64,000 bases of DNA from Lepidodermella squamata (Eukaryota > Animalia > Gastrotricha): positions 2,790,001 through 2,854,000 of the forward strand of contig JBLDXI010000033.1 in assembly GCA_047495785.1 (NCBI GenBank), read 5' to 3'. The notes under the pieces were generated by a model. That model did no database searches and was not told the DNA's origin. It worked only from the letters and a program-made list of their open reading frames with translations. Within the stretch, counting starts at the first letter, position 1, and every line of letters begins with the position of its first letter. The position numbers and the translations under genes are program-made. Of this stretch, positions 6,708 through 16,311 are shown one piece after another.

Positions 6708-8253
6708 TATTGAGCAACTACAACTCCAAGGCAGCAAATGTGGTAAATATTCAAAGCTCCAATTTCAAGCTATCACACGCATAACGCGAGATTCGCGAAT
6801 TCAGTGAAATGAGTAAAAAGCGCCGATTATTTCCCCCGTTTTCCCCCTTCTTCCTTTCATCACGTATCGCGTTAAAGTTGCAAGGAAGAAAAATCGATGT
6901 AAATCTCATCGAGCGCAAGTGATCGAACTGCTGATAGGCTACAAAAAAATAACATCTCCCCAACAGTTTAATCGCAACACACTAGACAGGAATTATTCAC
7001 ATTATGATTTCACAAAAAAATCTAAATTTCAATTAAGGGGTGATGGGTAATTTTACCTACTATAAATGAAAGTTATAACAAAATGTTAGCACGCAGCATA
7101 TCATATGCTACGCAAATCTCGGCGAAGAAGAATGACTTGTTTAACGTTTACCCACTTGCTGTTAAGAGCGTTTAACGCCAAGATATGTGAGTTGTGAGTT
7201 GGTGGTTCGTACCAATACATATCCTATATCTGAAGGCCTTAAATATAACGAAACACGGGGGAAGCCGTTCACAGTTTATCATAAAACACAGAACAGTTGA
7301 GGAGAGAATCCACTCGATTAGCAGCAATTTTTATAGAAAGATCTCCTTTGAAATCAAAAATAAATAAACTAATTTTGCAAATTGCAACACTCTGAAGCTC
7401 TTCATTCACCACAGATTAGTCTCCTTAATCCACTTTTTGGAATATAAGATATAACCCGGAGCTGCGGTCGAAATCCAGAGCTAAAAATTGGTAAAGTCCT
7501 GAAAATACCCCTAGTAATACCAAAATTTCGGACAAAAAACTGTCCGGAAACTGAGTGAAAACTAAGCGAATACTGGCCGTTTTTTAGTGGGAAACTAACA
7601 GAACACTATCAGATCATCTGTTAGTAAACAATCAGTAAACTGTCTGAAAAAACAACGAAATCTGTCCGAAAACTGACAGATTAAAAAAATTCGGGACAAA
7701 AAAAATAATTAATGCGCCACGCCAGCAGCTGTTGCAAACAATGCAAAAGCTGCGTGGAAGTGGCGCATGATGATTCAATTTATCGTTTCATTTTTTTATG
7801 GTAAAATCTAAAAAAAAAACCGCAAGAATTAGTATAATTGTACATTCATATAAAAATAGTAAAAATGAAAGCAAAACAGATGAGAACGTCGGATGGCCAT
7901 TCGAAAGGGACATTTCAACGAAAGACAGCTAGTTAACAAATGTCATTTTTTACAAAATAGATGTTTTCTTTTTAAAATAATATTGATACATATAAATTGA
8001 GCGAGCAAAGGTATTTGTGAAGTTAATGCATCACTATTAATAAAAAATCCTAGCATTATTAGCCGAGTTTTCATCACGAGCATCACTTGAACATGATTTG
8101 GTAGATGAATGATATACAAGAAAGGCTTAGATGGCATGACTTTTCCGCTTATTATCACCGGTAAAAAAAGGTTATGAGAGAAGGCTAAAAGAAAAAGAAG
8201 AAGAACAAAGATGTACAAATGGCCACTAGTTAGTTCATGCTCAGGCTCGAGTT

Positions 8254-9857
8254 TCATTCACTTTCGAGCTGTTCGCCCTGCAGCTGTTCGCCCTGCGGCT
8301 GTTCGCCCTGCGGCTGCTCGCCCTGCGGTTGGCCCTGTGGCGCTGGATCTTGCTGCTGTTGCATCACATTCTTCAACTGATTTAAGGCGTTCACAGTATC
8401 GTCGTCAAGCGGCGGCATCAGCGGTAGCTTGGCAACAATTGCCGCCATCTCCGGATCGTCTAATGCGGGACGAAACTCCATAAAATCCGGGACATTATAC
8501 TCAGTATAATAGGCGTGTTGATAAGGGAATGGCGCCGGGCCGTGGAGTCTGGCATCATCAGGATTTGAGCGGCGAATCTTTCGTCGAATATCGTCGCCGT
8601 GGTCCGCTAAGACTTTGCGCAGCCTTTTCCACAAATCAGTCATCTGACCAGAGGTCAGATGACGAAACAACAACATTAAGAAAACTGAAAAGACAGAGAT
8701 ATACTAACTACTGACTGAATGTTGTGCTAACTTACGTTTCACGCCGTTGACGAGAGTTTGATCGGCGACTATTTTTGAAGCCGCTCGCCACCTTTTTGGC
8801 TCAACTAGATAAAGCGCGAGATAATCATCCTGTTGAACAAAAGCATTTCTGTTTTCAGTGATCATAAACAGGTAACAGATACACTAACAGGTAAGAATAT
8901 ATCTGCAACAAATTTTCCCACCTCAATGGGGTCATTTGATGTGCCAAATTTTGATTCTATACGAGCAGTCCAGTTTATGTTGTTTATGTACTTGAAAGAA
9001 AATCCAATTTTTAATCGATAATAGCATGAGATATATAAACATACAACATGCGGCTTTTCTGCACAAATTACAAAAGGTTCCGATATCTCAGCTTCCTTGA
9101 CGCCGTGCTTTTTCAAGTACATCAAAAACTGGAAAATTCACCATGTAATGAGTAATAAGCTAACTAATTTCGGCCGAATTACTCACCTTTTTCTGATTGC
9201 CAAAACCCTGGTCAAGTTGGACTTTGATTTGCTACAGAAAAAATATAACGCATTTCCAATCTCATATTCCAAATCTAAATTCACCTTAAGTGTCACTTGA
9301 CCAGACTCAGCACTAGACTGAGAAGAGGACGGGGCATCGGACTGAGAAGTGGACGGGGCATCGGACTGAGAAGTGGACGGGGCATCGAGCTGAGAAGTGG
9401 ACTGGGCGCCGGACAGGGCACGAGACGTAGTGCCACGCTGAAAGCTTGCTTGAGAGCCGGATGGAGCGGCGGACTGAGCGGCGGACTGAGCGGCGGACTG
9501 AGTAGTCTGTCGGACTGACTGTTGGCCGAAGCCCACAGCATTGCGCTGATTTGGTTTTTGCGAGTTTGGTTGGGACGTTGGTTGGGTTACGAAGCCAGAA
9601 GCGGCGGCCTGACTAACCGCTGCGGGCGGCTGTTCGGAATAACAGCTGTTTCCACCTCGGCCGGTCTGATTTGACGATCGCTGTGGGTTAGCACCCTGCA
9701 TATTGAGATGGGCCGAAGGTTGCCCATACGCCGCCAAAATAGCTTGGGCATTGGCTCCTTGAGCTCTCGCTTTTGAGGTTAAAGCAACTATCAAATTCGG
9801 GCACGCGCTCCGAATAACCAGGTTGGGATTTTGTTGACGAACAGGATTATTACTCAT
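8254..9857 (-). CDS. Transposon ORF3: multi-exon protein with S/Q-rich repeats and a BEN-domain-like C-terminal region
   Basis: ATG 9857, then short GT-AG introns. The spliced C-terminal part reads EVGKFVADIFLPDDYLALYLVEPKRWRAASKIVADQTLVNGVKLFLMLLFRHLTSGQMTDLWKRLRKVLADHGDDIRRK, a BEN-like pattern. Tandem repeats STSQSDAP, QSAA and QGEQP are present. Confidence 0.65.
8266..8335. repeat. 15-bp coding tandem repeat (GCTGTTCGCCCTGCG-like, about 5 copies; QGEQP)
   Basis: Directly visible tandem units within transposon ORF3. Confidence 0.85.
9315..9502. repeat. 24-bp (STSQSDAP) and 12-bp (QSAA) coding tandem repeats
   Basis: GACTGAGAAGTGGACGGGGCATCG occurs about 3-4 times and GAGCGGCGGACT 3 times. 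Confidence 0.85.
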
Positions 9858-9921
9858 TTAAAAATCTATAAAATATCATGTGATAATTAACAAGGCAGTA
9901 AAAACTTTCGTAGTAAAAAAT

Positions 9922-12697
9922 TTAATAAAGGTCAGCCCCAATTCCCCAAGGAATGGCGTCGCATATATAGTTGTCATTGCAGGGGCGACGTTGGATAACA
10001 ACTAGTTTTGATGAGATTTTTTCCAAATCAATCAAACAATAACCGGCATTATCTCTCAAATTAGAAATAGTGTAGGAGCGGAAGATGTTCCTAGCGAAAT
10101 CATCCGATAAAACGTTGCCGATGGCATTCGCAAGATGCGTCTTGGCTTCAGTTGCCAGCTCGGTAGAACCACACAGAGAGGAAAGTCGCTGCAAAATGAC
10201 ACCAGCATCAGGAAGACAGACATAGCGTCGAATTAATGCCTTATCAACAACCATGGGAGTCGCTGCATTTCTCACGAAACCGAGAATTTCTCCACACGCT
10301 GAAGTACCGTCATCCAGTTTGAACTCAACGGCGAACGACCGAGGTAACCGTCGCTTTGTGCCGAATTTCAACCATAGCCCATCAAAACGCTGAGATTTGT
10401 AGTAGGCAGTAGTAAAAATAGTATAACCGCCATTGACACAGACAGAGTTCAGGATAGCTTGCTGCTCCGAATCCGGGCGAGTCGCGTTGGAGAGCACAAC
10501 AGTAAGGCGCTTGCTGTAGTCCCTGTCACCTTTCAACTGACGTCGATGAAGGGCCACCAACATACGATGTATCTGGTGTTGCGTTCCTACGTACACGTGC
10601 TTCAACCATCCAATCAACCCTTCGTGAGGAAAAGCCGAAAAGCTGTCGATTCGCCCGAAACGCTCGGCTTGAGCCGGTAAATGTCCCACTGTATGCAAAT
10701 TGTAGGTCTCCGTTTTCACGCCACCGTACAGTATTGGGAAGAAACGGCGATATTCGTTCAGAAGAGACCGAGATTGTTGTATCGCCTTGAGTTTTTTGTC
10801 AGCATCTTCCTCATCGAATTCGATCAACAGGCGAAAAGCAAGAGACAGGCAAACGGTGAGTAGAAAGTATGTATCTGGCATGAATCGCGCAAGGACGGGG
10901 ACCCGGACGTAGCCAACCCAAAACTTCATATGTTTCCCTTTGAACTGGCTCGCCGCGGTCTCGCCAAATACTTTCAGCCTAACCGACTGCATCTGCCTGG
11001 GAACTTGTATTTCTCGAAGTATTCGGGCGATGTAATTACGAATTCGAATCGGTAAAATGTCGTCGTACTGAATAGAACTGCGCAACTCCTGCTTAGCTAC
11101 GCCTTCACAGATGCAATGGAGGTGGTCGACCGGTGCATCTCGAGGAAGCAACATGCGGCGTTTACAGAGCACACAGGAGCCTTTCATACCATGCACTACG
11201 ACTCCAGTTCTATCGATTTCAGGGCCGACTTTGTTTATTTCATCGGGTGGACGCAAATCAAACTCGGAATCCTCGACGAATCGATATCGACGGCTGCCAA
11301 AAAGATGATCTCCTTTGAGGAAGCAGAAAGGACAGCCATACTCGGCGTGAAAGCTGCGTATATTGAGACAGTCGCATTTTGCAGGCGCATCGGCAATGAG
11401 CGAGAAGAGCCATACAGTAAAGTCTACCTCTGCCCCCTTTTTCGTAACCAGTCTCTTCTTGACCTCAAAATTTGCGACTGTGTTCGAGAGACAAAGATCG
11501 AGGAATTGTTGGTACTTGGGACTGGTAGGTCCCTGCCAAATCCCCAGGAGGAGCATATTCTCCGGCTTGTACCTGAAACATAATTAACACACTAATCACC
11601 GTTTTCTTCTTCTATGTTTTTAAATACCTTGCATATTCAGGCAGATTCTTGATGGTTGCCAGCAAAGGCCACACGTTTGTTCCAGTTCCCGCTCGCTTTG
11701 ACAAGGTAGTACCATCAAAATTTATTTGTAGCTGAAGATCGAGATTGTGAACATCAGTGAGAGGTACAACGCCAGCGTCGATGAAGTCACTCAATATTAC
11801 CAATAGTTGCCAGGCTAACGAGGGCACGATGATCTCCCCCATACTAGCCGTTGATAATGTTGTTCCACATTGCCCGCATTTCTTTGCAGCATCAACTTGC
11901 ACAAAACATGACGGGCATAAACTTTGCAAAATTTGAGGAAGAACCACGTCACCCATGCCAGTCAGCATTTTTCTGTAAGATTTCAACGAGGACGGAATCG
12001 AGGCCAGCTTCGCAGCATCACCTTTGGCAAGCTCCCGAAAGCCCTTCGTTACAAGATCCAAGCCTGCCTGCGCAAGGCCATGATCAATTTCAAGCGCACG
12101 AAGAACCGACATGGGCGAATAGCTGTTGATCTTCGGGTCTGGATTGGGCTGTTTTACTATTTCAGCATGAACAAAACGATCCGCCGTGTCAGTGATGTTT
12201 GTTTTCGCGCCGGCTGGAACTGAAGTTCGTGGGGCTTCGTCGGCCTCATCGGCCTCGTCCATTTCGAAATCAGACTGGTTTACCTCCCAATCACTTGGGA
12301 ATGAGTCGCAAGATGACTGTGAAAGCACTTCGTACTCATCGTCCATCCCTGATTGACCAGGCAGGTCGATTTCATCTGATTCTTCCTCACTGATGGGCCA
12401 TTGTTCACCATGCGCCGTATAGGATGCTTCAGCAAACTCAGGAGCAGGCTCATACGACTCGGATGAGGTAGACGGCCTATCAGCAATTACCGAATGCGTG
12501 GTTTGAACGTTTGTTGGCCTCTCACCACATTCCAACGACCTAATTAACGTAGCTGAAGCTATTCTTCGTTGAGTAGCCGACAACCCAACGTCCGATTCGG
12601 ATTCTTCTTCTTCTTCTTCTTCTTCTTCTTCTTCTTCAGCTCCGCCGAGCTGTTGGAGTAACAAATCGATCTCTTTTCGAGCCTCTTTTGGCGGCAT
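9922..12697 (-). CDS. Transposon ORF2: EnSpm/CACTA-type DDE transposase (intron 11573-11627)
   Basis: Motifs LQINFDG, WPLLATI, LLLGIWQG, IADAPAK...GCPFC, DHLHCICEGV and YNLHTVGHL...FG....SAFPHE are the CMC transposase signature. No stop or frameshift is seen. The ATG at 12697 is inferred; the frame is open from the acceptor at 12741. Confidence 0.9.
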
Positions 12698-12805
12698 AAG
12701 CAAACGCACAGGGTACAGTTGAACAATGAAAAGTAATTTCCTAAAACATATTAAGTAATCAATAAGACAAATGGTTCAATGTATCGTTCGTGGCAAGAAA
12801 TCATA

Positions 12806-13223
12806 TCAATCCTTTATATGTCCCTTTGCGGATTTTTTGGATTTTTCCTTAGGTTTCTTAGGTTTTGGCGGGAATGCTAGCGGATGTCGCTTAGTTTCAT
12901 GCTTCTCAAGCTCATACTTGGACTTGAAACTCATATCGCATACAGGGCACACAAAACTACTATTATGTTCTTTTCGCTCATGTGCCTGCACCGTCAACCA
13001 TTCGTCGGAGTAAAAATCGCATGACTGACATGAGAAACAGTCTGCGGGTATCAACCGCCCCTTAGCCGGAACTTTGCTAGAATAAACGTAAGACTACTCT
13101 CAATCTTATAGACATTTGAAAATAGTTTGCTAACCGTTTTTTAATGGGTGGCTGAGGAGCCTCGGAGCTTGAACTGCTTGAGGTCACATCTTCAGCGTCA
13201 GAGTCAGACGACTTTGAGCTCAT
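12806..13223 (-). CDS. Transposon ORF1: about 120-aa protein with two C2H2 zinc fingers and basic NLS-like stretches
   Basis: Exons 13223-13135 and 13076-12806 (58-nt GT-AG intron) give PIKKRKVP...CQSC...HERKEH...CPVC...HETKRH...PKPKKPKEKSKK. Confidence 0.75.
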
Positions 13224-14895
13224 GAAGATTTTAACAAAATAGATGGTAAATGAGACGCGCCTTTGAAAAAGCTGCACTTAAAGGCATAAAGCATGCAATA
13301 TGGGTAGATGAACATATGGACATAGGTACAGAGCAATCATAAACACTAGGCGTGAACGATCATAATAACTAGAAACTAATTTTTTCAACTTAAAACATGA
13401 AGCAACCTGCATGTAATCAACTAAGTTAGCAGTGAAAGGTTAAGGCGGCTGTCAGCAGTTCATATGCATCGCGGACTTAGCAGATTTTCAAACAAAGCAC
13501 ATCCCCAAAAGCTGCGAAATTAATTATTTATTAAATTATTTATCATAATCTTCAAAATATAATCAAAATAGCTCGTACAACAATTTTACCAAGTCGGCCG
13601 AAAAGCAGGCGTGAGAATTTTCGGTAAGCGGAGGTTTGGTCAATTTTTGTAATTTTTTCAACCAAACTAACCGGAAACTGTCTGTTTCAGGCGTTCAAAC
13701 GGACAGGAGACTGCATGTTTCCGAACAGTTGATCTAACAGTGCACAGTGCGGAAACTGAACGAAAACTGTCCGTTTGAACGCCGGACGGGTTTGCTAGGG
13801 ACTCAGTCGCCAAAAACAAAAACTTGAAAAATAAACCGACGCAAACCCATAAAAAATTGACAGATTTAATAATTTTTTCCAAATATTTAAGTTTCAGTAA
13901 TTTTGAAATGATTATTGACAAATTAATTTTTTTAATTTAAATTTTTGCGCGCGCGCTTTCCGACGCGGGATGCGGAGGGCAGGGTTCGTTATCTATCCAG
14001 GCATCGATCTTTGATCTTGGTTGGATCTTGGCTAATTTGAAGACACCCAGCTCCCAACGACGATCGGGCTATCAGCATTTTCAAAGGCGTGCCGAAAAGC
14101 CATTCCGTAATTCGTGCCGTAAAGGCCAAATATGACATCATTAACAAGTTAGGGCGATGGATTTCCACTCAGAGCTCCGAGGGTTTCGCCGCGTCCACAA
14201 CAGAGGCATAGATTCTTTCGTGTTACTTGCCAGGGCTCTCAAATGTACGAGCTCTGTATGATAAATTGTGATAAATCTACGGCTGCCGCGTCATGTAGTC
14301 GTTGTCGTTTTGGCCTCCTCCAATTTCGTTGGTAGAAGTGCCCTCTCAGAGGGCACCCCACTCCCAACCTAACCCCAACCTAACGTTAACGTTAACCTTG
14401 ACCCTCTGATAGCGAGCCATAAGCATAAGCACGTGGTGGCCAGAATCTTAGGCTGACTTCCGTTTCAGCCCGAAGCAGTTGTTTGCTTTCATTGCTGGAT
14501 TGTCCGCCGCCGAAAGACGATTTGCCGCGGCGATAATGACAACCTTGTTTGACTAAATGTGATATAGCTGGGATATAGGTACTATCGTCTCCCTCGAGTT
14601 ACTCCCCTAGGTTTTGCATGATGGCATAGGTGGACAAAAAGGTGAGCCCATGGCCACGCCATCGACCTGTTCGCAGCGTAATCGGCTTTTGCGCCATTTG
14701 CCATATTCAAAATTAAGTTATGAAAATAGATACTAAATGGATCATATGGTGAAGTAATCTGATCGATTTAGGAAGTCGGTTTTGCATTTAGTTTAATTTT
14801 ATAACTGTTTTTCCCTTGCATAAAACTAAGTCTTCAAGTTCAGGCCGTTTTTAGCTCAATTGCGTTTCCTCCTAGATTTTTAGCATTAATTGAAA

Positions 14896-16311
14896 ATGCG
14901 AGACGTTCCGAACGGTAAAATTCGTTGCGGCGTTGTGGCAGAAGCTGAAGGAGATGAGATGACGCGAATTATCTGGGACCTTATTAAGGAGAAGCTGATT
15001 CTGCCATATTTGGATATAGAACTTCAAACATTCGACCTTTCTATTCAAAATCGCGACTTAACGGACGATAAAGTTACTATGGAGTACGTCGAGGCTGTCA
15101 GGAAATGCGGTGTTGGTGTCAAATGTGCTACCATCACCCCTGGTAAGTGTTTCTTTGCCGGTGGTGGCCAATGATAACTGTGCATCTATTGCAATTTTCC
15201 AGACGAAGCTCGGGTAAAGGAGTTTGGCTTGAAATCAATGTATAAATCTCCGAACGGAACCATCCGTAACCAACTCGGCGGAACGCTTTTCCGTGAGCCG
15301 ATTATCTGCTCCAACATTCCGCGTGTCGTTAGCCACTGGAAGCACCCGATTATTGTAGGTCGCCACGCTTTCGCCGACCAATATGCCGCATTGGAAGCGC
15401 TCTTGCCACACGGTGAAAGCGGCACTTTGTCGATTCAGTGGAAACCCGATGGATCGAACGTATCGAAGGAACTCCGATCAATTCATTTCCCGTTGCCCGG
15501 AACGGATAACACCGGGGGCGTTGCTTTGCTGATGTACAACTTGGATGCCTCGATTACTGATTTCGCCAAGTCATGTTGCAGTCTCGCCGTCGAACGCAAC
15601 ATGCCACTGTACTTCACGACGAAAAACACCATCTTAAAGAGCTATGATGGACGTTTCCGTTCAATTTTTGATGCCGTTGCCAAAGACTGGCCCGGTCTCA
15701 CATACGAGCACCGCTTGATCGACGACATGGTTGCGTATGTCCTGAAAAGCGAGGGTTCCTTCGTCTGGGCCTGTAAAAACTACGACGGGGATGTTCAATC
15801 TGACATGGTTGCCCAGGTAAGATTCAGGCCAATTCTGCTACTGATTTGCTATAATATAAACTCGACAGGGCTTTGGTTCATTGGGTCTCATGTCTTCGGT
15901 TTTGATCTGCCCTGATGGTCGCACACGAGTTGCCGAAGCAGGTAGGCTATGCGTATTAATTTAGCTCTTTCATTAATCGTGACAAGTGTAGCCCATGGCA
16001 CAATTACTCGTCATTACCGCTTGCATCAACAAGGAAAGGAGACTTCGTCGAACCCTATCGCATCCGTTGTTGCATGGGCTCGTGCTCTGTCGCATCGCGC
16101 TGCTTTGGATAACAACGCTGATTTGGCGCAATTCGCCAAGCAGCTGGAGGCTTCATGCGTACTTACTGTCGAGAATGGAAAAATGACCAAGGACTTGGCC
16201 TTGTGCAAAAATCCTGGTTCTACTGCCGTCGATCGACGCGAATATCTCAACACCCAGGAATTCATGGACGCTCTTGCCGAAACACTCAACGGTCAACTTG
16301 CTAAGCTGTGA
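14896..16311 (+). CDS. IDH1: NADP-dependent isocitrate dehydrogenase, cytosolic/peroxisomal type
   Basis: [43 protein letters not shown] and AHGTITRHY are present. No mitochondrial presequence; the C-terminus is AKL (PTS1). Three short introns. Confidence 0.95.

What the first reader, a model, noticed from the sequence alone, without database searches (positions are those of the whole stretch)
7509..13800. Intact EnSpm-like transposon built as a three-gene, operon-like cassette (C2H2 protein, transposase, BEN-like protein)
Seen: three same-strand genes packed head to tail. ORF1 stops at 12806 and a TTTTAG acceptor follows about 65 nt later (12741), with no usable GT donor in between. ORF2 stops at 9922, an acceptor follows about 55 nt later (9866), and the ORF3 ATG is 8 nt further on, preceded by an in-frame TAA. 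No promoter space exists between the genes. Known: maize En/Spm makes TnpA and TnpD from one promoter by alternative cis-splicing. Inference: the element either uses the host's SL trans-splicing to resolve a polycistronic RNA, or splices one leader to three acceptors. The ORF1 exon-1 donor (13134, phase 2) is in frame with the transposase acceptor, so exon skipping could switch between zinc-finger protein and transposase.
Basis: partly seen in the sequence, partly recalled or inferred. Interest (0 to 1): 0.85.

Follow-up and report, generated by a model that had tools for sequence, protein, structure and literature searches.

The report
Three-gene Mirage-like DNA transposon, transcribed
This is an intact, transcribed cut-and-paste DNA transposon of the CACTA/Mirage/Chapaev group that packs a zinc-finger gene, its transposase and a third orphan gene head to tail. 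Whether the host's trans-splicing separates them like an operon is plausible but still untested.

Summary
Window 7509-13800 (minus strand, 6,292 bp) is one mobile element. It has CCCTAG...CTAGGG ends, a 2-bp AC duplication, clustered subterminal repeats and three same-strand genes.

- **ORF1:** 119 aa, two C2H2 fingers.
- **ORF2:** 906 aa, a CMC-type DDE transposase. It keeps D328/D418/E674, C(2)C and H(3)H, its fold resembles RAG1, and its relatives carry Pfam tnp2/DUF1258 (the Mirage group).
- **ORF3:** 442 aa, six exons, no detectable relatives. "BEN-like" is not supported.

Stop-to-ATG spacers are 108 and 64 nt, each with a T-rich AG acceptor 43 or 8 nt before the ATG.

One RNA run confirms the ORF2 intron and all five ORF3 introns. 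ORF2 and ORF3 appear as separate contigs of similar depth (44 versus 36-49), with a hole over the spacer. A DNA run confirms the 13800 boundary and shows internally deleted copies.

The "one leader cis-spliced to three acceptors" model is disfavoured: no such joints were found, and leader depth is 2-10 times lower. SL trans-splicing of a polycistron remains possible (about 0.3-0.45), but no contig reaches the acceptors. Internal promoters are about equally likely.

The element is a new, divergent member of a known kind, with at most 32% identity to any transposase in the library searched.

The parts
7509..13800 (-). Whole element, 6,292 bp
   Evidence: Termini CCCTAG...CTAGGG. DNA run X2 has contigs that leave the sequence at 13800/13801 into two different flanks. 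No second copy in the window.
13801..13802 (.). Target-site duplication AC (right copy)
   Evidence: AC at 13801-13802 equals AC at 7507-7508. One insertion only, 1/16 by chance.
7507..7508 (.). Target-site duplication AC (left copy)
13788..13800 (-). 5' terminal inverted repeat (CCCTAGCAAACCC)
   Evidence: 10/13 match to the reverse complement of the other end
7509..7521 (-). 3' terminal inverted repeat (plus strand CCCTAGTAATACC)
13664..13790 (-). 5' subterminal repeats (GACAGTTTNC-type motif)
   Evidence: Repeat family D2. Of 21 window matches to the motif, 6 lie in the two subterminal zones, all on the minus strand.
7535..7685 (-). 3' subterminal repeats
13135..13223 (-). ORF1 exon 1 (acidic/Ser-rich, ends PPIKKR)
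   Evidence: Gene model. RNA depth about 11. The intron was not seen in RNA.
12806..13076 (-). ORF1 exon 2: two C2H2 fingers plus a basic tail (ORF1 = 119 aa)
   Evidence: Pfam zf-C2H2 E=1.1e-6. Predicted intron 13134-13077 keeps the frame.
12698..12805 (-). Spacer 1 (108 nt), with a single AG, the acceptor TTTTAG at 12741-12746
   Evidence: No RNA contig covers it.
12813..12818 (-). TATAAA, poly(A)-signal-like, 5 nt before the ORF1 stop
   Evidence: Motif only.
11628..12697 (-). ORF2 (transposase) exon 1: poly-Glu tract, CxxC...CxxC ribbon, first catalytic D328
   Evidence: Atlas hits to Tnp2/DUF1258 clusters at 0.85-0.92.
9922..11572 (-). ORF2 exon 2: D418, C437-x2-C440, H650-x3-H654, E674, then a beta-rich C-terminal domain (ORF2 = 906 aa)
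   Evidence: The 55-nt intron 11627-11573 was seen in an RNA contig. Supported by HMMER hits, Pfam families of relatives, conservation and a RAG1-like fold.
9858..9921 (-). Spacer 2 (64 nt), with acceptor TTTTATAG ending at 9866
   Evidence: It lies inside the RNA hole 9755-9951.
9921..9926 (-). ATTAAA, poly(A)-signal-like, overlapping the ORF2 stop
   Evidence: Motif only.
9285..9857 (-). ORF3 exon 1 (Gln/Ser-rich, 24-nt tandem repeats)
   Evidence: RNA joints, translation, repeat family D1
9187..9231 (-). ORF3 exon 2
   Evidence: RNA joints 9231>9285 and 9128>9187
9045..9128 (-). ORF3 exon 3
8888..8990 (-). ORF3 exon 4
8736..8828 (-). ORF3 exon 5
8254..8684 (-). ORF3 exon 6, coding part, ending in QPQGE repeats (ORF3 = 442 aa)
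   Evidence: repeat family D3
7850..8253 (-). ORF3 3' UTR (RNA contigs continue past 7850)
   Evidence: X1 records 1 and 2. CATAAA/AATGAA/GATAAA at 7800-7784.

Best explanation
[quoted passage not shown] This is shown, at about 0.9 confidence.

**How it moves.** ORF2 is a DDE transposase with a RAG1-like core. It would cut at the CCCTAG termini and reinsert with a 2-bp duplication. The C2H2 protein (ORF1), the orphan ORF3 protein, or both are inferred to be the TnpA-like accessory factors that read the subterminal GACAGTTT-type repeats.

**How it is expressed.**
- Shown: ORF2 and ORF3 exist as separate, abundant, correctly spliced mRNAs of similar depth. Their ends fall inside the 64-nt spacer.
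- Inferred, at about 0.4: transcription runs co-directionally through the cassette, at least ORF2 into ORF3.
- In that model the upstream mRNA is cleaved after the TATAAA or ATTAAA at its stop codon. The downstream cistron is then capped by the host's spliced leader at the unpaired acceptor (12741 or 9866), as in nematode and flatworm operons.
- ORF1 is much less abundant, so the operon may start downstream of it.

The confidence value given is for the whole statement, including the inferred expression mechanism.
For: **Identity**
- HMMER found 2,138 relatives, best 32% identity. Of the 30 top hits, 20 carry PF02992 and 17 carry PF06869. PF06869 is the Mirage group according to PMC3985635.
- D328/D418/E674, C(2)C and H(3)H are 100% conserved in 21 sequences. 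These are the CMC hallmarks in PMC12730594.
- The AF2 model has pLDDT 80 and pTM 0.82, and its 41 best PDB matches are all RAG1/RAG-like.

**Activity**
- The DNA run shows other flanks at 13800 and internally deleted copies: 10063>13718, and 10107>12829 with a 10-nt filler.

**Expression**
- RNA contigs carry all six GT..AG introns. ORF2 depth is 44 and ORF3 depth is 36-49. Depth is zero over 9755-9951.
- Spacers are 108 and 64 nt. Acceptors lie 43 and 8 nt before the ATGs, and PAS-like hexamers sit at both stops.
- The neighbouring host IDH gene has the same TTTTTAG 13 nt before its ATG.
- First-stage notes report operon/SL signatures genome-wide. These are unchecked.
- Operon spacers of about 100 bp are typical of SL hosts (PMC8629364).
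Against: - No RNA contig reaches 12741 or 9866, and no SL-like loose end was seen. The only RNA loose end is at 13705.
- Logan contigs drop rare forms, and only one small RNA run was available.
- The two acceptors are TAG, not the CAG seen in 4 of the 6 confirmed cis introns.
- The ORF1/leader region has 2-10 times lower depth than ORF2/ORF3. That does not fit one transcript starting at the 5' end unless the ORF1 mRNA is unstable.
- That the host trans-splices at all rests on unchecked notes. No SL RNA gene was found in the window.
- The TSD rests on one insertion.
- ORF1 and ORF3 have no detectable homologues, so their role in transposition is inference.
Confidence: 0.4

Rival explanations
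1. Same transposon, but each gene has its own promoter lying inside the upstream coding sequence or spacer. The acceptor-like motifs are unused, or are used only for ordinary 5' SL addition to monocistronic transcripts.
For: - ORF1/leader RNA depth (2-21) is far below ORF2/ORF3 (44-49), so most ORF2/ORF3 RNA need not start at the element's 5' end.
- The RNA contigs are separate, with a hole at the spacer.
- 13% of ATGs in this window have such a motif upstream by chance.
- Both acceptors are the weaker TAG type.
Against: - A 64-nt T-rich spacer leaves little room for a promoter.
- ORF2 and ORF3 depths are nearly equal.
- PAS-like hexamers at the stops, followed by an unpaired acceptor, follow operon grammar.
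Confidence: 0.35
2. En/Spm-style alternative cis-splicing. One 5' leader (donor near 13589 or the ORF1 exon-1 donor at 13134) is joined to acceptors 13261, 12741 or 9866 to make three mRNAs. This includes an in-frame ORF1-exon-1/transposase fusion.
For: - Exon 1 joined to 12740 is in frame and stop-free, and would give the transposase the PPIKKR basic motif.
- En/Spm makes TnpA and TnpD this way (general knowledge).
Against: - None of these joints is in the RNA contigs, although all six internal introns were recovered.
- A shared leader should be at least as deep as ORF2 plus ORF3 (about 90), but depth is 4-21.
- The supposed 13589-13261 intron is covered as well as its flanks.
- Exon 1 joined to 9865 places a stop-terminated uORF across the ORF3 ATG.
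- The in-frame fit has a chance probability of about 0.17.
Confidence: 0.08
3. ORF1 and/or ORF3 are passenger genes, either captured host sequence or lineage-specific additions. They have no role in transposition, and the tight packing is incidental.
For: - No homologues were found for either gene.
- The five related loci (L001-L005) have no ORF1 or ORF3 homologue. L002 and L003 carry unrelated same-strand downstream ORFs.
- A diverged genomic copy carries a Cys-to-Phe change at a zinc ligand of ORF1.
Against: - ORF3 keeps six exons in frame and is expressed as strongly as the transposase.
- The deletion derivative 10107>12829 retains nearly all of ORF1.
- Clustered subterminal repeats imply a sequence-specific binding protein beyond the short TIR.
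Confidence: 0.15

Closest known systems
Mirage elements (Pfam DUF1258, nematodes and other animals) within the CMC supergroup
   Same: - The transposase's nearest relatives carry DUF1258 and/or Transposase_21.
[quoted passage not shown]
- It makes a 2-bp TSD and has short TIRs.
   Different: - The ORF itself is at most 32% identical to any library protein and falls below Pfam thresholds.
- Termini are CCCTAG, not CA-/CAC-.
- It carries two extra orphan genes in the same orientation.
Maize En/Spm (CACTA): TnpA plus TnpD from one promoter
   Same: - The transposase belongs to the same supergroup.
- It has subterminal repeat clusters.
- It makes more than one protein from a co-oriented unit.
   Different: - The TSD is 2 bp rather than 3 bp, and there are no CACTA termini.
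- The genes are sequential, not nested.
- No alternative cis-splicing from a shared leader was seen in RNA.
SL-resolved operons of nematodes and flatworms (e.g. Macrostomum lignano, PMC8629364)
   Same: - Genes lie on the same strand with spacers of about 100 nt or less.
- An unpaired T-rich acceptor sits just upstream of each downstream ATG.
- A PAS-like hexamer sits at the upstream stop.
   Different: - Here the unit lies inside a mobile element.
- SL addition and polycistronic RNA are not shown.
- The acceptors are TAG rather than the [T/C]TNCAG consensus.
RAG1 / Transib transposase core
   Same: The predicted fold of ORF2 exon 2 matches RAG1 core structures (Foldseek probability 1.00, TM about 0.38).
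   Different: - Sequence identity is only 12-15%.
- The TSD differs (Transib makes 5 bp).
- The relationship is at supergroup level only.

Membership tests
CMC (CACTA-Mirage-Chapaev) supergroup | DDE catalytic triad in an RNase H-like core | tested here: met
   D328, D418 and E674 are invariant in a 21-sequence alignment. The model has a RAG1-like fold.
CMC (CACTA-Mirage-Chapaev) supergroup | [quoted passage not shown] | tested here: met
   C437-x2-C440 and H650-x3-H654 are invariant.
CMC (CACTA-Mirage-Chapaev) supergroup | Direct Pfam match to Transposase_21 (PF02992) or DUF1258 (PF06869) | tested here: not met
   Neither exon's translation reaches E<=1. Membership rests on homologues: 20/30 carry PF02992 and 17/30 carry PF06869, with phmmer E down to 2e-28.
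CMC (CACTA-Mirage-Chapaev) supergroup | 2-5 bp TSD | tested here: met
   AC/AC flanks. This is a single insertion, so the evidence is weak.
CMC (CACTA-Mirage-Chapaev) supergroup | Termini 5'-CA(C)...(G)TG-3' in most members | tested here: not met
   Termini are CCCTAG...CTAGGG. The 13800 end is confirmed by DNA contigs.
Mirage branch | Transposase clusters with DUF1258 proteins rather than plant CACTA or Chapaev (DUF1280) | tested here: inconclusive
   DUF1258 is frequent among the top hits, and none of the 30 members matched the Chapaev family DUF1280/PF06918. No rooted tree with reference Mirage/CACTA/Chapaev sequences was built.
En/Spm-type expression | Two or more products by alternative cis-splicing from one 5' leader | tested here: not met
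   RNA contigs show no leader-to-ORF2/ORF3 joints. Leader depth is 2-10 times lower than ORF2/ORF3. These are contigs, not raw reads.
SL-resolved operon | Spliced leader joined at the acceptor of downstream cistrons | tested here: inconclusive
   No RNA contig covers 9755-9951 or 12447-12849, and no SL-like loose ends were seen.
SL-resolved operon | Polycistronic precursor spanning the spacers | tested here: inconclusive
   No bridging contig was found. Precursors are rare, and contigs drop rare forms.
BEN-domain protein (ORF3) | Match to the Pfam BEN domain | tested here: inconclusive
   No hit on any exon-wise piece at E<=10. No homologues and no atlas signal. The candidate region spans four exons, and the spliced protein could not be submitted by reference.

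The most novel reading that the evidence does not exclude
The transposon is itself a miniature SL-resolved operon. One terminal promoter drives a polycistronic RNA, and the host's trans-splicing and 3'-end machinery cuts it into zinc-finger, transposase and ORF3 mRNAs. A mobile element would then have adapted its gene grammar to the host's operon system in place of the alternative cis-splicing used by plant En/Spm.
Probability: 0.3. Interest if true: 0.7.

Novelty: new member of a known kind. Interest (0 to 1): 0.45.

Why it matters
- It is a young, apparently autonomous CMC element with two orphan accessory genes, in an animal whose CMC elements are poorly described.
- It shows spliced expression and has deletion derivatives, so it may still be mobile.
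- If the tight cassette is resolved by SL trans-splicing, it would be a clear case of a transposon exploiting host operon processing for multi-gene expression.
- That question is directly testable with ordinary RNA-seq reads. It would also bear on how easily foreign multi-gene units become expressible in trans-splicing hosts.
- If the genes have internal promoters, the element is an ordinary but well-preserved family.

Tried and rejected
- **Word-index homologue searches.** The transposase exon gave only 4 weak hits. The ORF3 last exon and ORF1 exon 2 gave none.
- **Pfam.** No family matched the transposase exons. No BEN or any other family matched ORF3 pieces or the downstream ORFs of related loci (one search was a frame error).
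- **Protein atlas.** Two ORF3 pieces gave nothing above noise.
- **Rfam.** No family in the whole window, so no SL RNA gene here.
- **Second copy or empty site.** None in the window.
- **Contexts of five related transposases (L001-L005).** The contigs are 3.5-5.3 kb. None has an ORF1 or ORF3 homologue, so conserved three-gene order could not be tested.
- **Literature.** No paper was found on trans-spliced or polycistronic DNA-transposon genes.
- **Earlier boundary error.** I first placed the left end at 7508.
- **Host identity.** It was considered (a flatworm or nematode-like SL host) but could not be established. No conclusion depends on it.
- Only 7850-13849 was laid on reads (6,000-letter limit), so the 3' terminus 7509-7849 has no read evidence.


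Full report
**1. What is in the sequence**

Three ORF systems lie head to tail on the minus strand between 13800 and 7509.

- **ORF1.** Programmatic gene models give ATG 13223, exon 13223-13135, a predicted 58-nt GT..AG intron, and exon 13076-12806. The product is 119 aa with two C2H2 fingers (Pfam zf-C2H2, E=1.1e-6).
- **ORF2.** ATG 12697, exon 12697-11628, a 55-nt intron, and exon 11572-9922. The product is 906 aa.
- **ORF3.** ATG 9857.

- The ORF1 stop is at 12808-12806, and the only AG of the 108-nt spacer is the TTTTAG acceptor at 12741.
- The ORF2 stop is at 9924-9922, the acceptor TTTTATAG ends at 9866, and the ORF3 ATG is 8 nt further on behind an in-frame TAA.
- ORF1 exon 1 joined to 12740 reads in frame into the transposase ATG. 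Joined to 9865 it terminates after five codons.

**2. Element boundaries**

- On the plus strand the element begins CCCTAGTAATACC at 7509 and ends GGGTTTGCTAGGG at 13800. The inverted match is 10/13, and the flanks are AC/AC.
- In DNA run X2, two contigs leave the sequence at 13800/13801 into different flanks. This independently fixes that end.
- The same run holds two internally deleted forms: 10063>13718, and 10107>12829 with a 10-nt filler. These are the usual products of abortive gap repair after excision.
- A GACAGTTTNC-type motif clusters in both subterminal zones. Six of 21 window matches lie there, all on the element's strand.
- No other copy or empty site is in the window.
- The 3' end (7509-7849) lay outside the 6,000-letter stretch laid on reads, so it has no read evidence.

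**3. The transposase**

- The word-index search found almost nothing.
- The exhaustive HMMER search found 2,138 relatives, best 32% identity.
- Of 30 aligned top sequences, 20 carry Pfam Transposase_21 (tnp2, CACTA) and 17 carry DUF1258. PMC3985635 equates DUF1258 with the Mirage group and describes it as a close homologue of Transposase_21.
- In an alignment of the full spliced ORF2 with 20 relatives, D328, D418, E674, C437-x2-C440 and H650-x3-H654 are invariant. PMC12730594 gives these as the CMC/Transib hallmarks.
- An AlphaFold model of exon 2 (pLDDT 80, pTM 0.82) has RAG1 or RAG-like chains as its 41 best PDB matches. This fits the CMC-Transib-RAG1 relationship.
- The protein's own exons do not reach Pfam thresholds, the termini are not CAC...GTG, and the TSD is 2 bp. 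It is therefore a divergent CMC element nearest the Mirage type, not a canonical En/Spm.

**4. RNA evidence**

Run X1 is RNA, because its contigs are spliced.
- One contig covers 9952-12446 with the ORF2 intron removed (depth 44).
- Another covers 7912-9357 with five GT..AG introns removed (depth 48.6). Further pieces cover 9358-9754 (depth 34-36).
- With those joints ORF3 is a six-exon, 442-aa ORF ending at 8254.
- Depth is zero over 9755-9951. That interval holds the ORF2 stop, the 64-nt spacer and the first 100 nt of ORF3.
- Depth is also zero over 12447-12849. That interval holds spacer 1, the ORF2 start and a GAA repeat that also breaks the DNA contigs.
- The region upstream of and across ORF1 is covered only weakly: 4 at 13650-13849, about 20 at 13250-13649, 11 at 13050-13249 and 2.4 at 12850-13049.
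- The only RNA loose end is at 13705. It looks like a variant subterminal repeat, not a leader.

**5. What this says about expression**

- *Separate mRNAs.* ORF2 and ORF3 exist as separate mature mRNAs of similar abundance, with ends inside or next to the spacer. An abundant bicistronic mRNA is unlikely.
- *Shared cis-spliced leader.* This model is disfavoured. All six internal introns were recovered, but no joint from 13590 or 13135 to 13260, 12740 or 9865. The proposed leader and the proposed 13589-13261 intron have similar depth. All of it is 2-10 times lower than the ORF2/ORF3 bodies, whereas a shared leader should be the deepest part.
- *SL trans-splicing of a polycistron.* This is neither shown nor excluded, because no contig reaches the acceptors.

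Points in favour of SL trans-splicing:
- The spacers are 108 and 64 nt.
- Acceptors lie 43 and 8 nt before the ATGs. Background for such a motif is 13% of ATGs, and a single AG in spacer 1 has P about 0.06.
- PAS-like TATAAA (12818) and ATTAAA (9926) sit at the two stops.
- The adjacent host IDH gene has the same TTTTTAG 13 nt before its ATG.
- Unchecked first-stage notes report operon/SL signatures across this genome.
- About 100-bp spacers are typical in SL hosts (PMC8629364).

Points against:
- The acceptors are TAG, whereas 4 of 6 confirmed cis acceptors are CAG.
- ORF1 abundance is low, which suggests that much ORF2/ORF3 transcription starts downstream of ORF1.
- Host SL usage was not verified here, and there is no SL RNA gene in the window.

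My estimates: ORF2-ORF3 co-transcription with SL at 9865 about 0.45, all three genes in one operon about 0.3, internal promoters about 0.35, and a cis-spliced shared leader about 0.08.

A conditional remark: if the host SL ends in AUG, as flatworm SLs do, that AUG would be out of frame with ORF2 (43 nt to the ATG). Before ORF3 it would open a four-codon uORF whose stop overlaps the ORF3 ATG.

**6. Accessory genes**

- ORF1 and ORF3 have no detectable relatives.
- ORF3 pieces match no Pfam family, BEN included, and nothing in the atlas. "BEN-like" is therefore unsupported. The candidate region spans four small exons, and the spliced protein could not be submitted, so the test is inconclusive rather than negative.
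- Five distant relatives' contigs (L001-L005) are short and have no ORF1 or ORF3 homologue. L002 and L003 do have unrelated same-strand ORFs downstream of the transposase.
- A diverged genomic copy carries three nonsynonymous changes out of four in ORF1, one at a zinc-ligand Cys.
- A TnpA-like role in binding the subterminal repeats is inference from the En/Spm precedent.

**7. Verdict**

It is an intact, transcribed, probably still mobile CMC/Mirage-like transposon with two orphan co-oriented genes, which makes it a new divergent member of a known kind. The interesting claim, that the host's trans-splicing resolves it like an operon, remains open. Raw RNA-seq reads would test it directly. The alternative cis-splicing version is unlikely.

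Noticed in passing
window 9922-10520 (ORF2 residues ~710-906): The beta-rich C-terminal domain of the transposase model gives weak Foldseek matches to the DNMT1 BAH1 domain (E about 0.02, TM by target 0.40, ranks 42-46). It might be a chromatin-reading module on a transposase.
   Followed up: no
window 10063-13718 and 10107-12829: DNA run X2 holds two internally deleted derivatives, one with a 10-nt filler. DNA contigs also break near 9950, and depth is doubled only over about 9850-10107. This suggests short MITE-like derivatives that keep a small internal segment.
   Followed up: partly
window 13097/13226: One RNA contig (depth 8) joins 13097 to 13226 on opposite strands, a fold-back across ORF1 exon 1 and its intron. 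It could be an assembly artefact or an inverted rearranged copy giving hairpin RNA.
   Followed up: no
window 13705: An RNA contig leaves the element at 13705 into a sequence resembling a variant of the CGTTTGAACGC subterminal unit. A DNA loose end at 13800 has a similar CGTTTAAATG string. This hints at a related family or a nested or tandem copy elsewhere.
   Followed up: no
window 9292-9519, 8253-8342, 12589-12648: There are coding tandem repeats inside the element's genes. A 24-nt unit (STSQSDAP) and a 12-nt unit (QSAA) lie in ORF3 exon 1, a 15-nt unit (QPQGE) lies at the ORF3 C-terminus, and a (GAA)n tract encodes poly-Glu in ORF2.
   Followed up: no
window 14870-14900 (plus strand): The host NADP-isocitrate-dehydrogenase-like gene next to the element has CCTCCTAG and ATTTTTAG acceptors 21 and 13 nt upstream of its ATG, with no upstream exon evident. 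This is the same grammar as in the element's spacers.
   Followed up: no
L002:4264-5079 and L003:3172-4248: Metagenomic Mirage-like transposases (28-31% identical) are also followed by same-strand ORFs of unknown function, unrelated to ORF3.
   Followed up: partly
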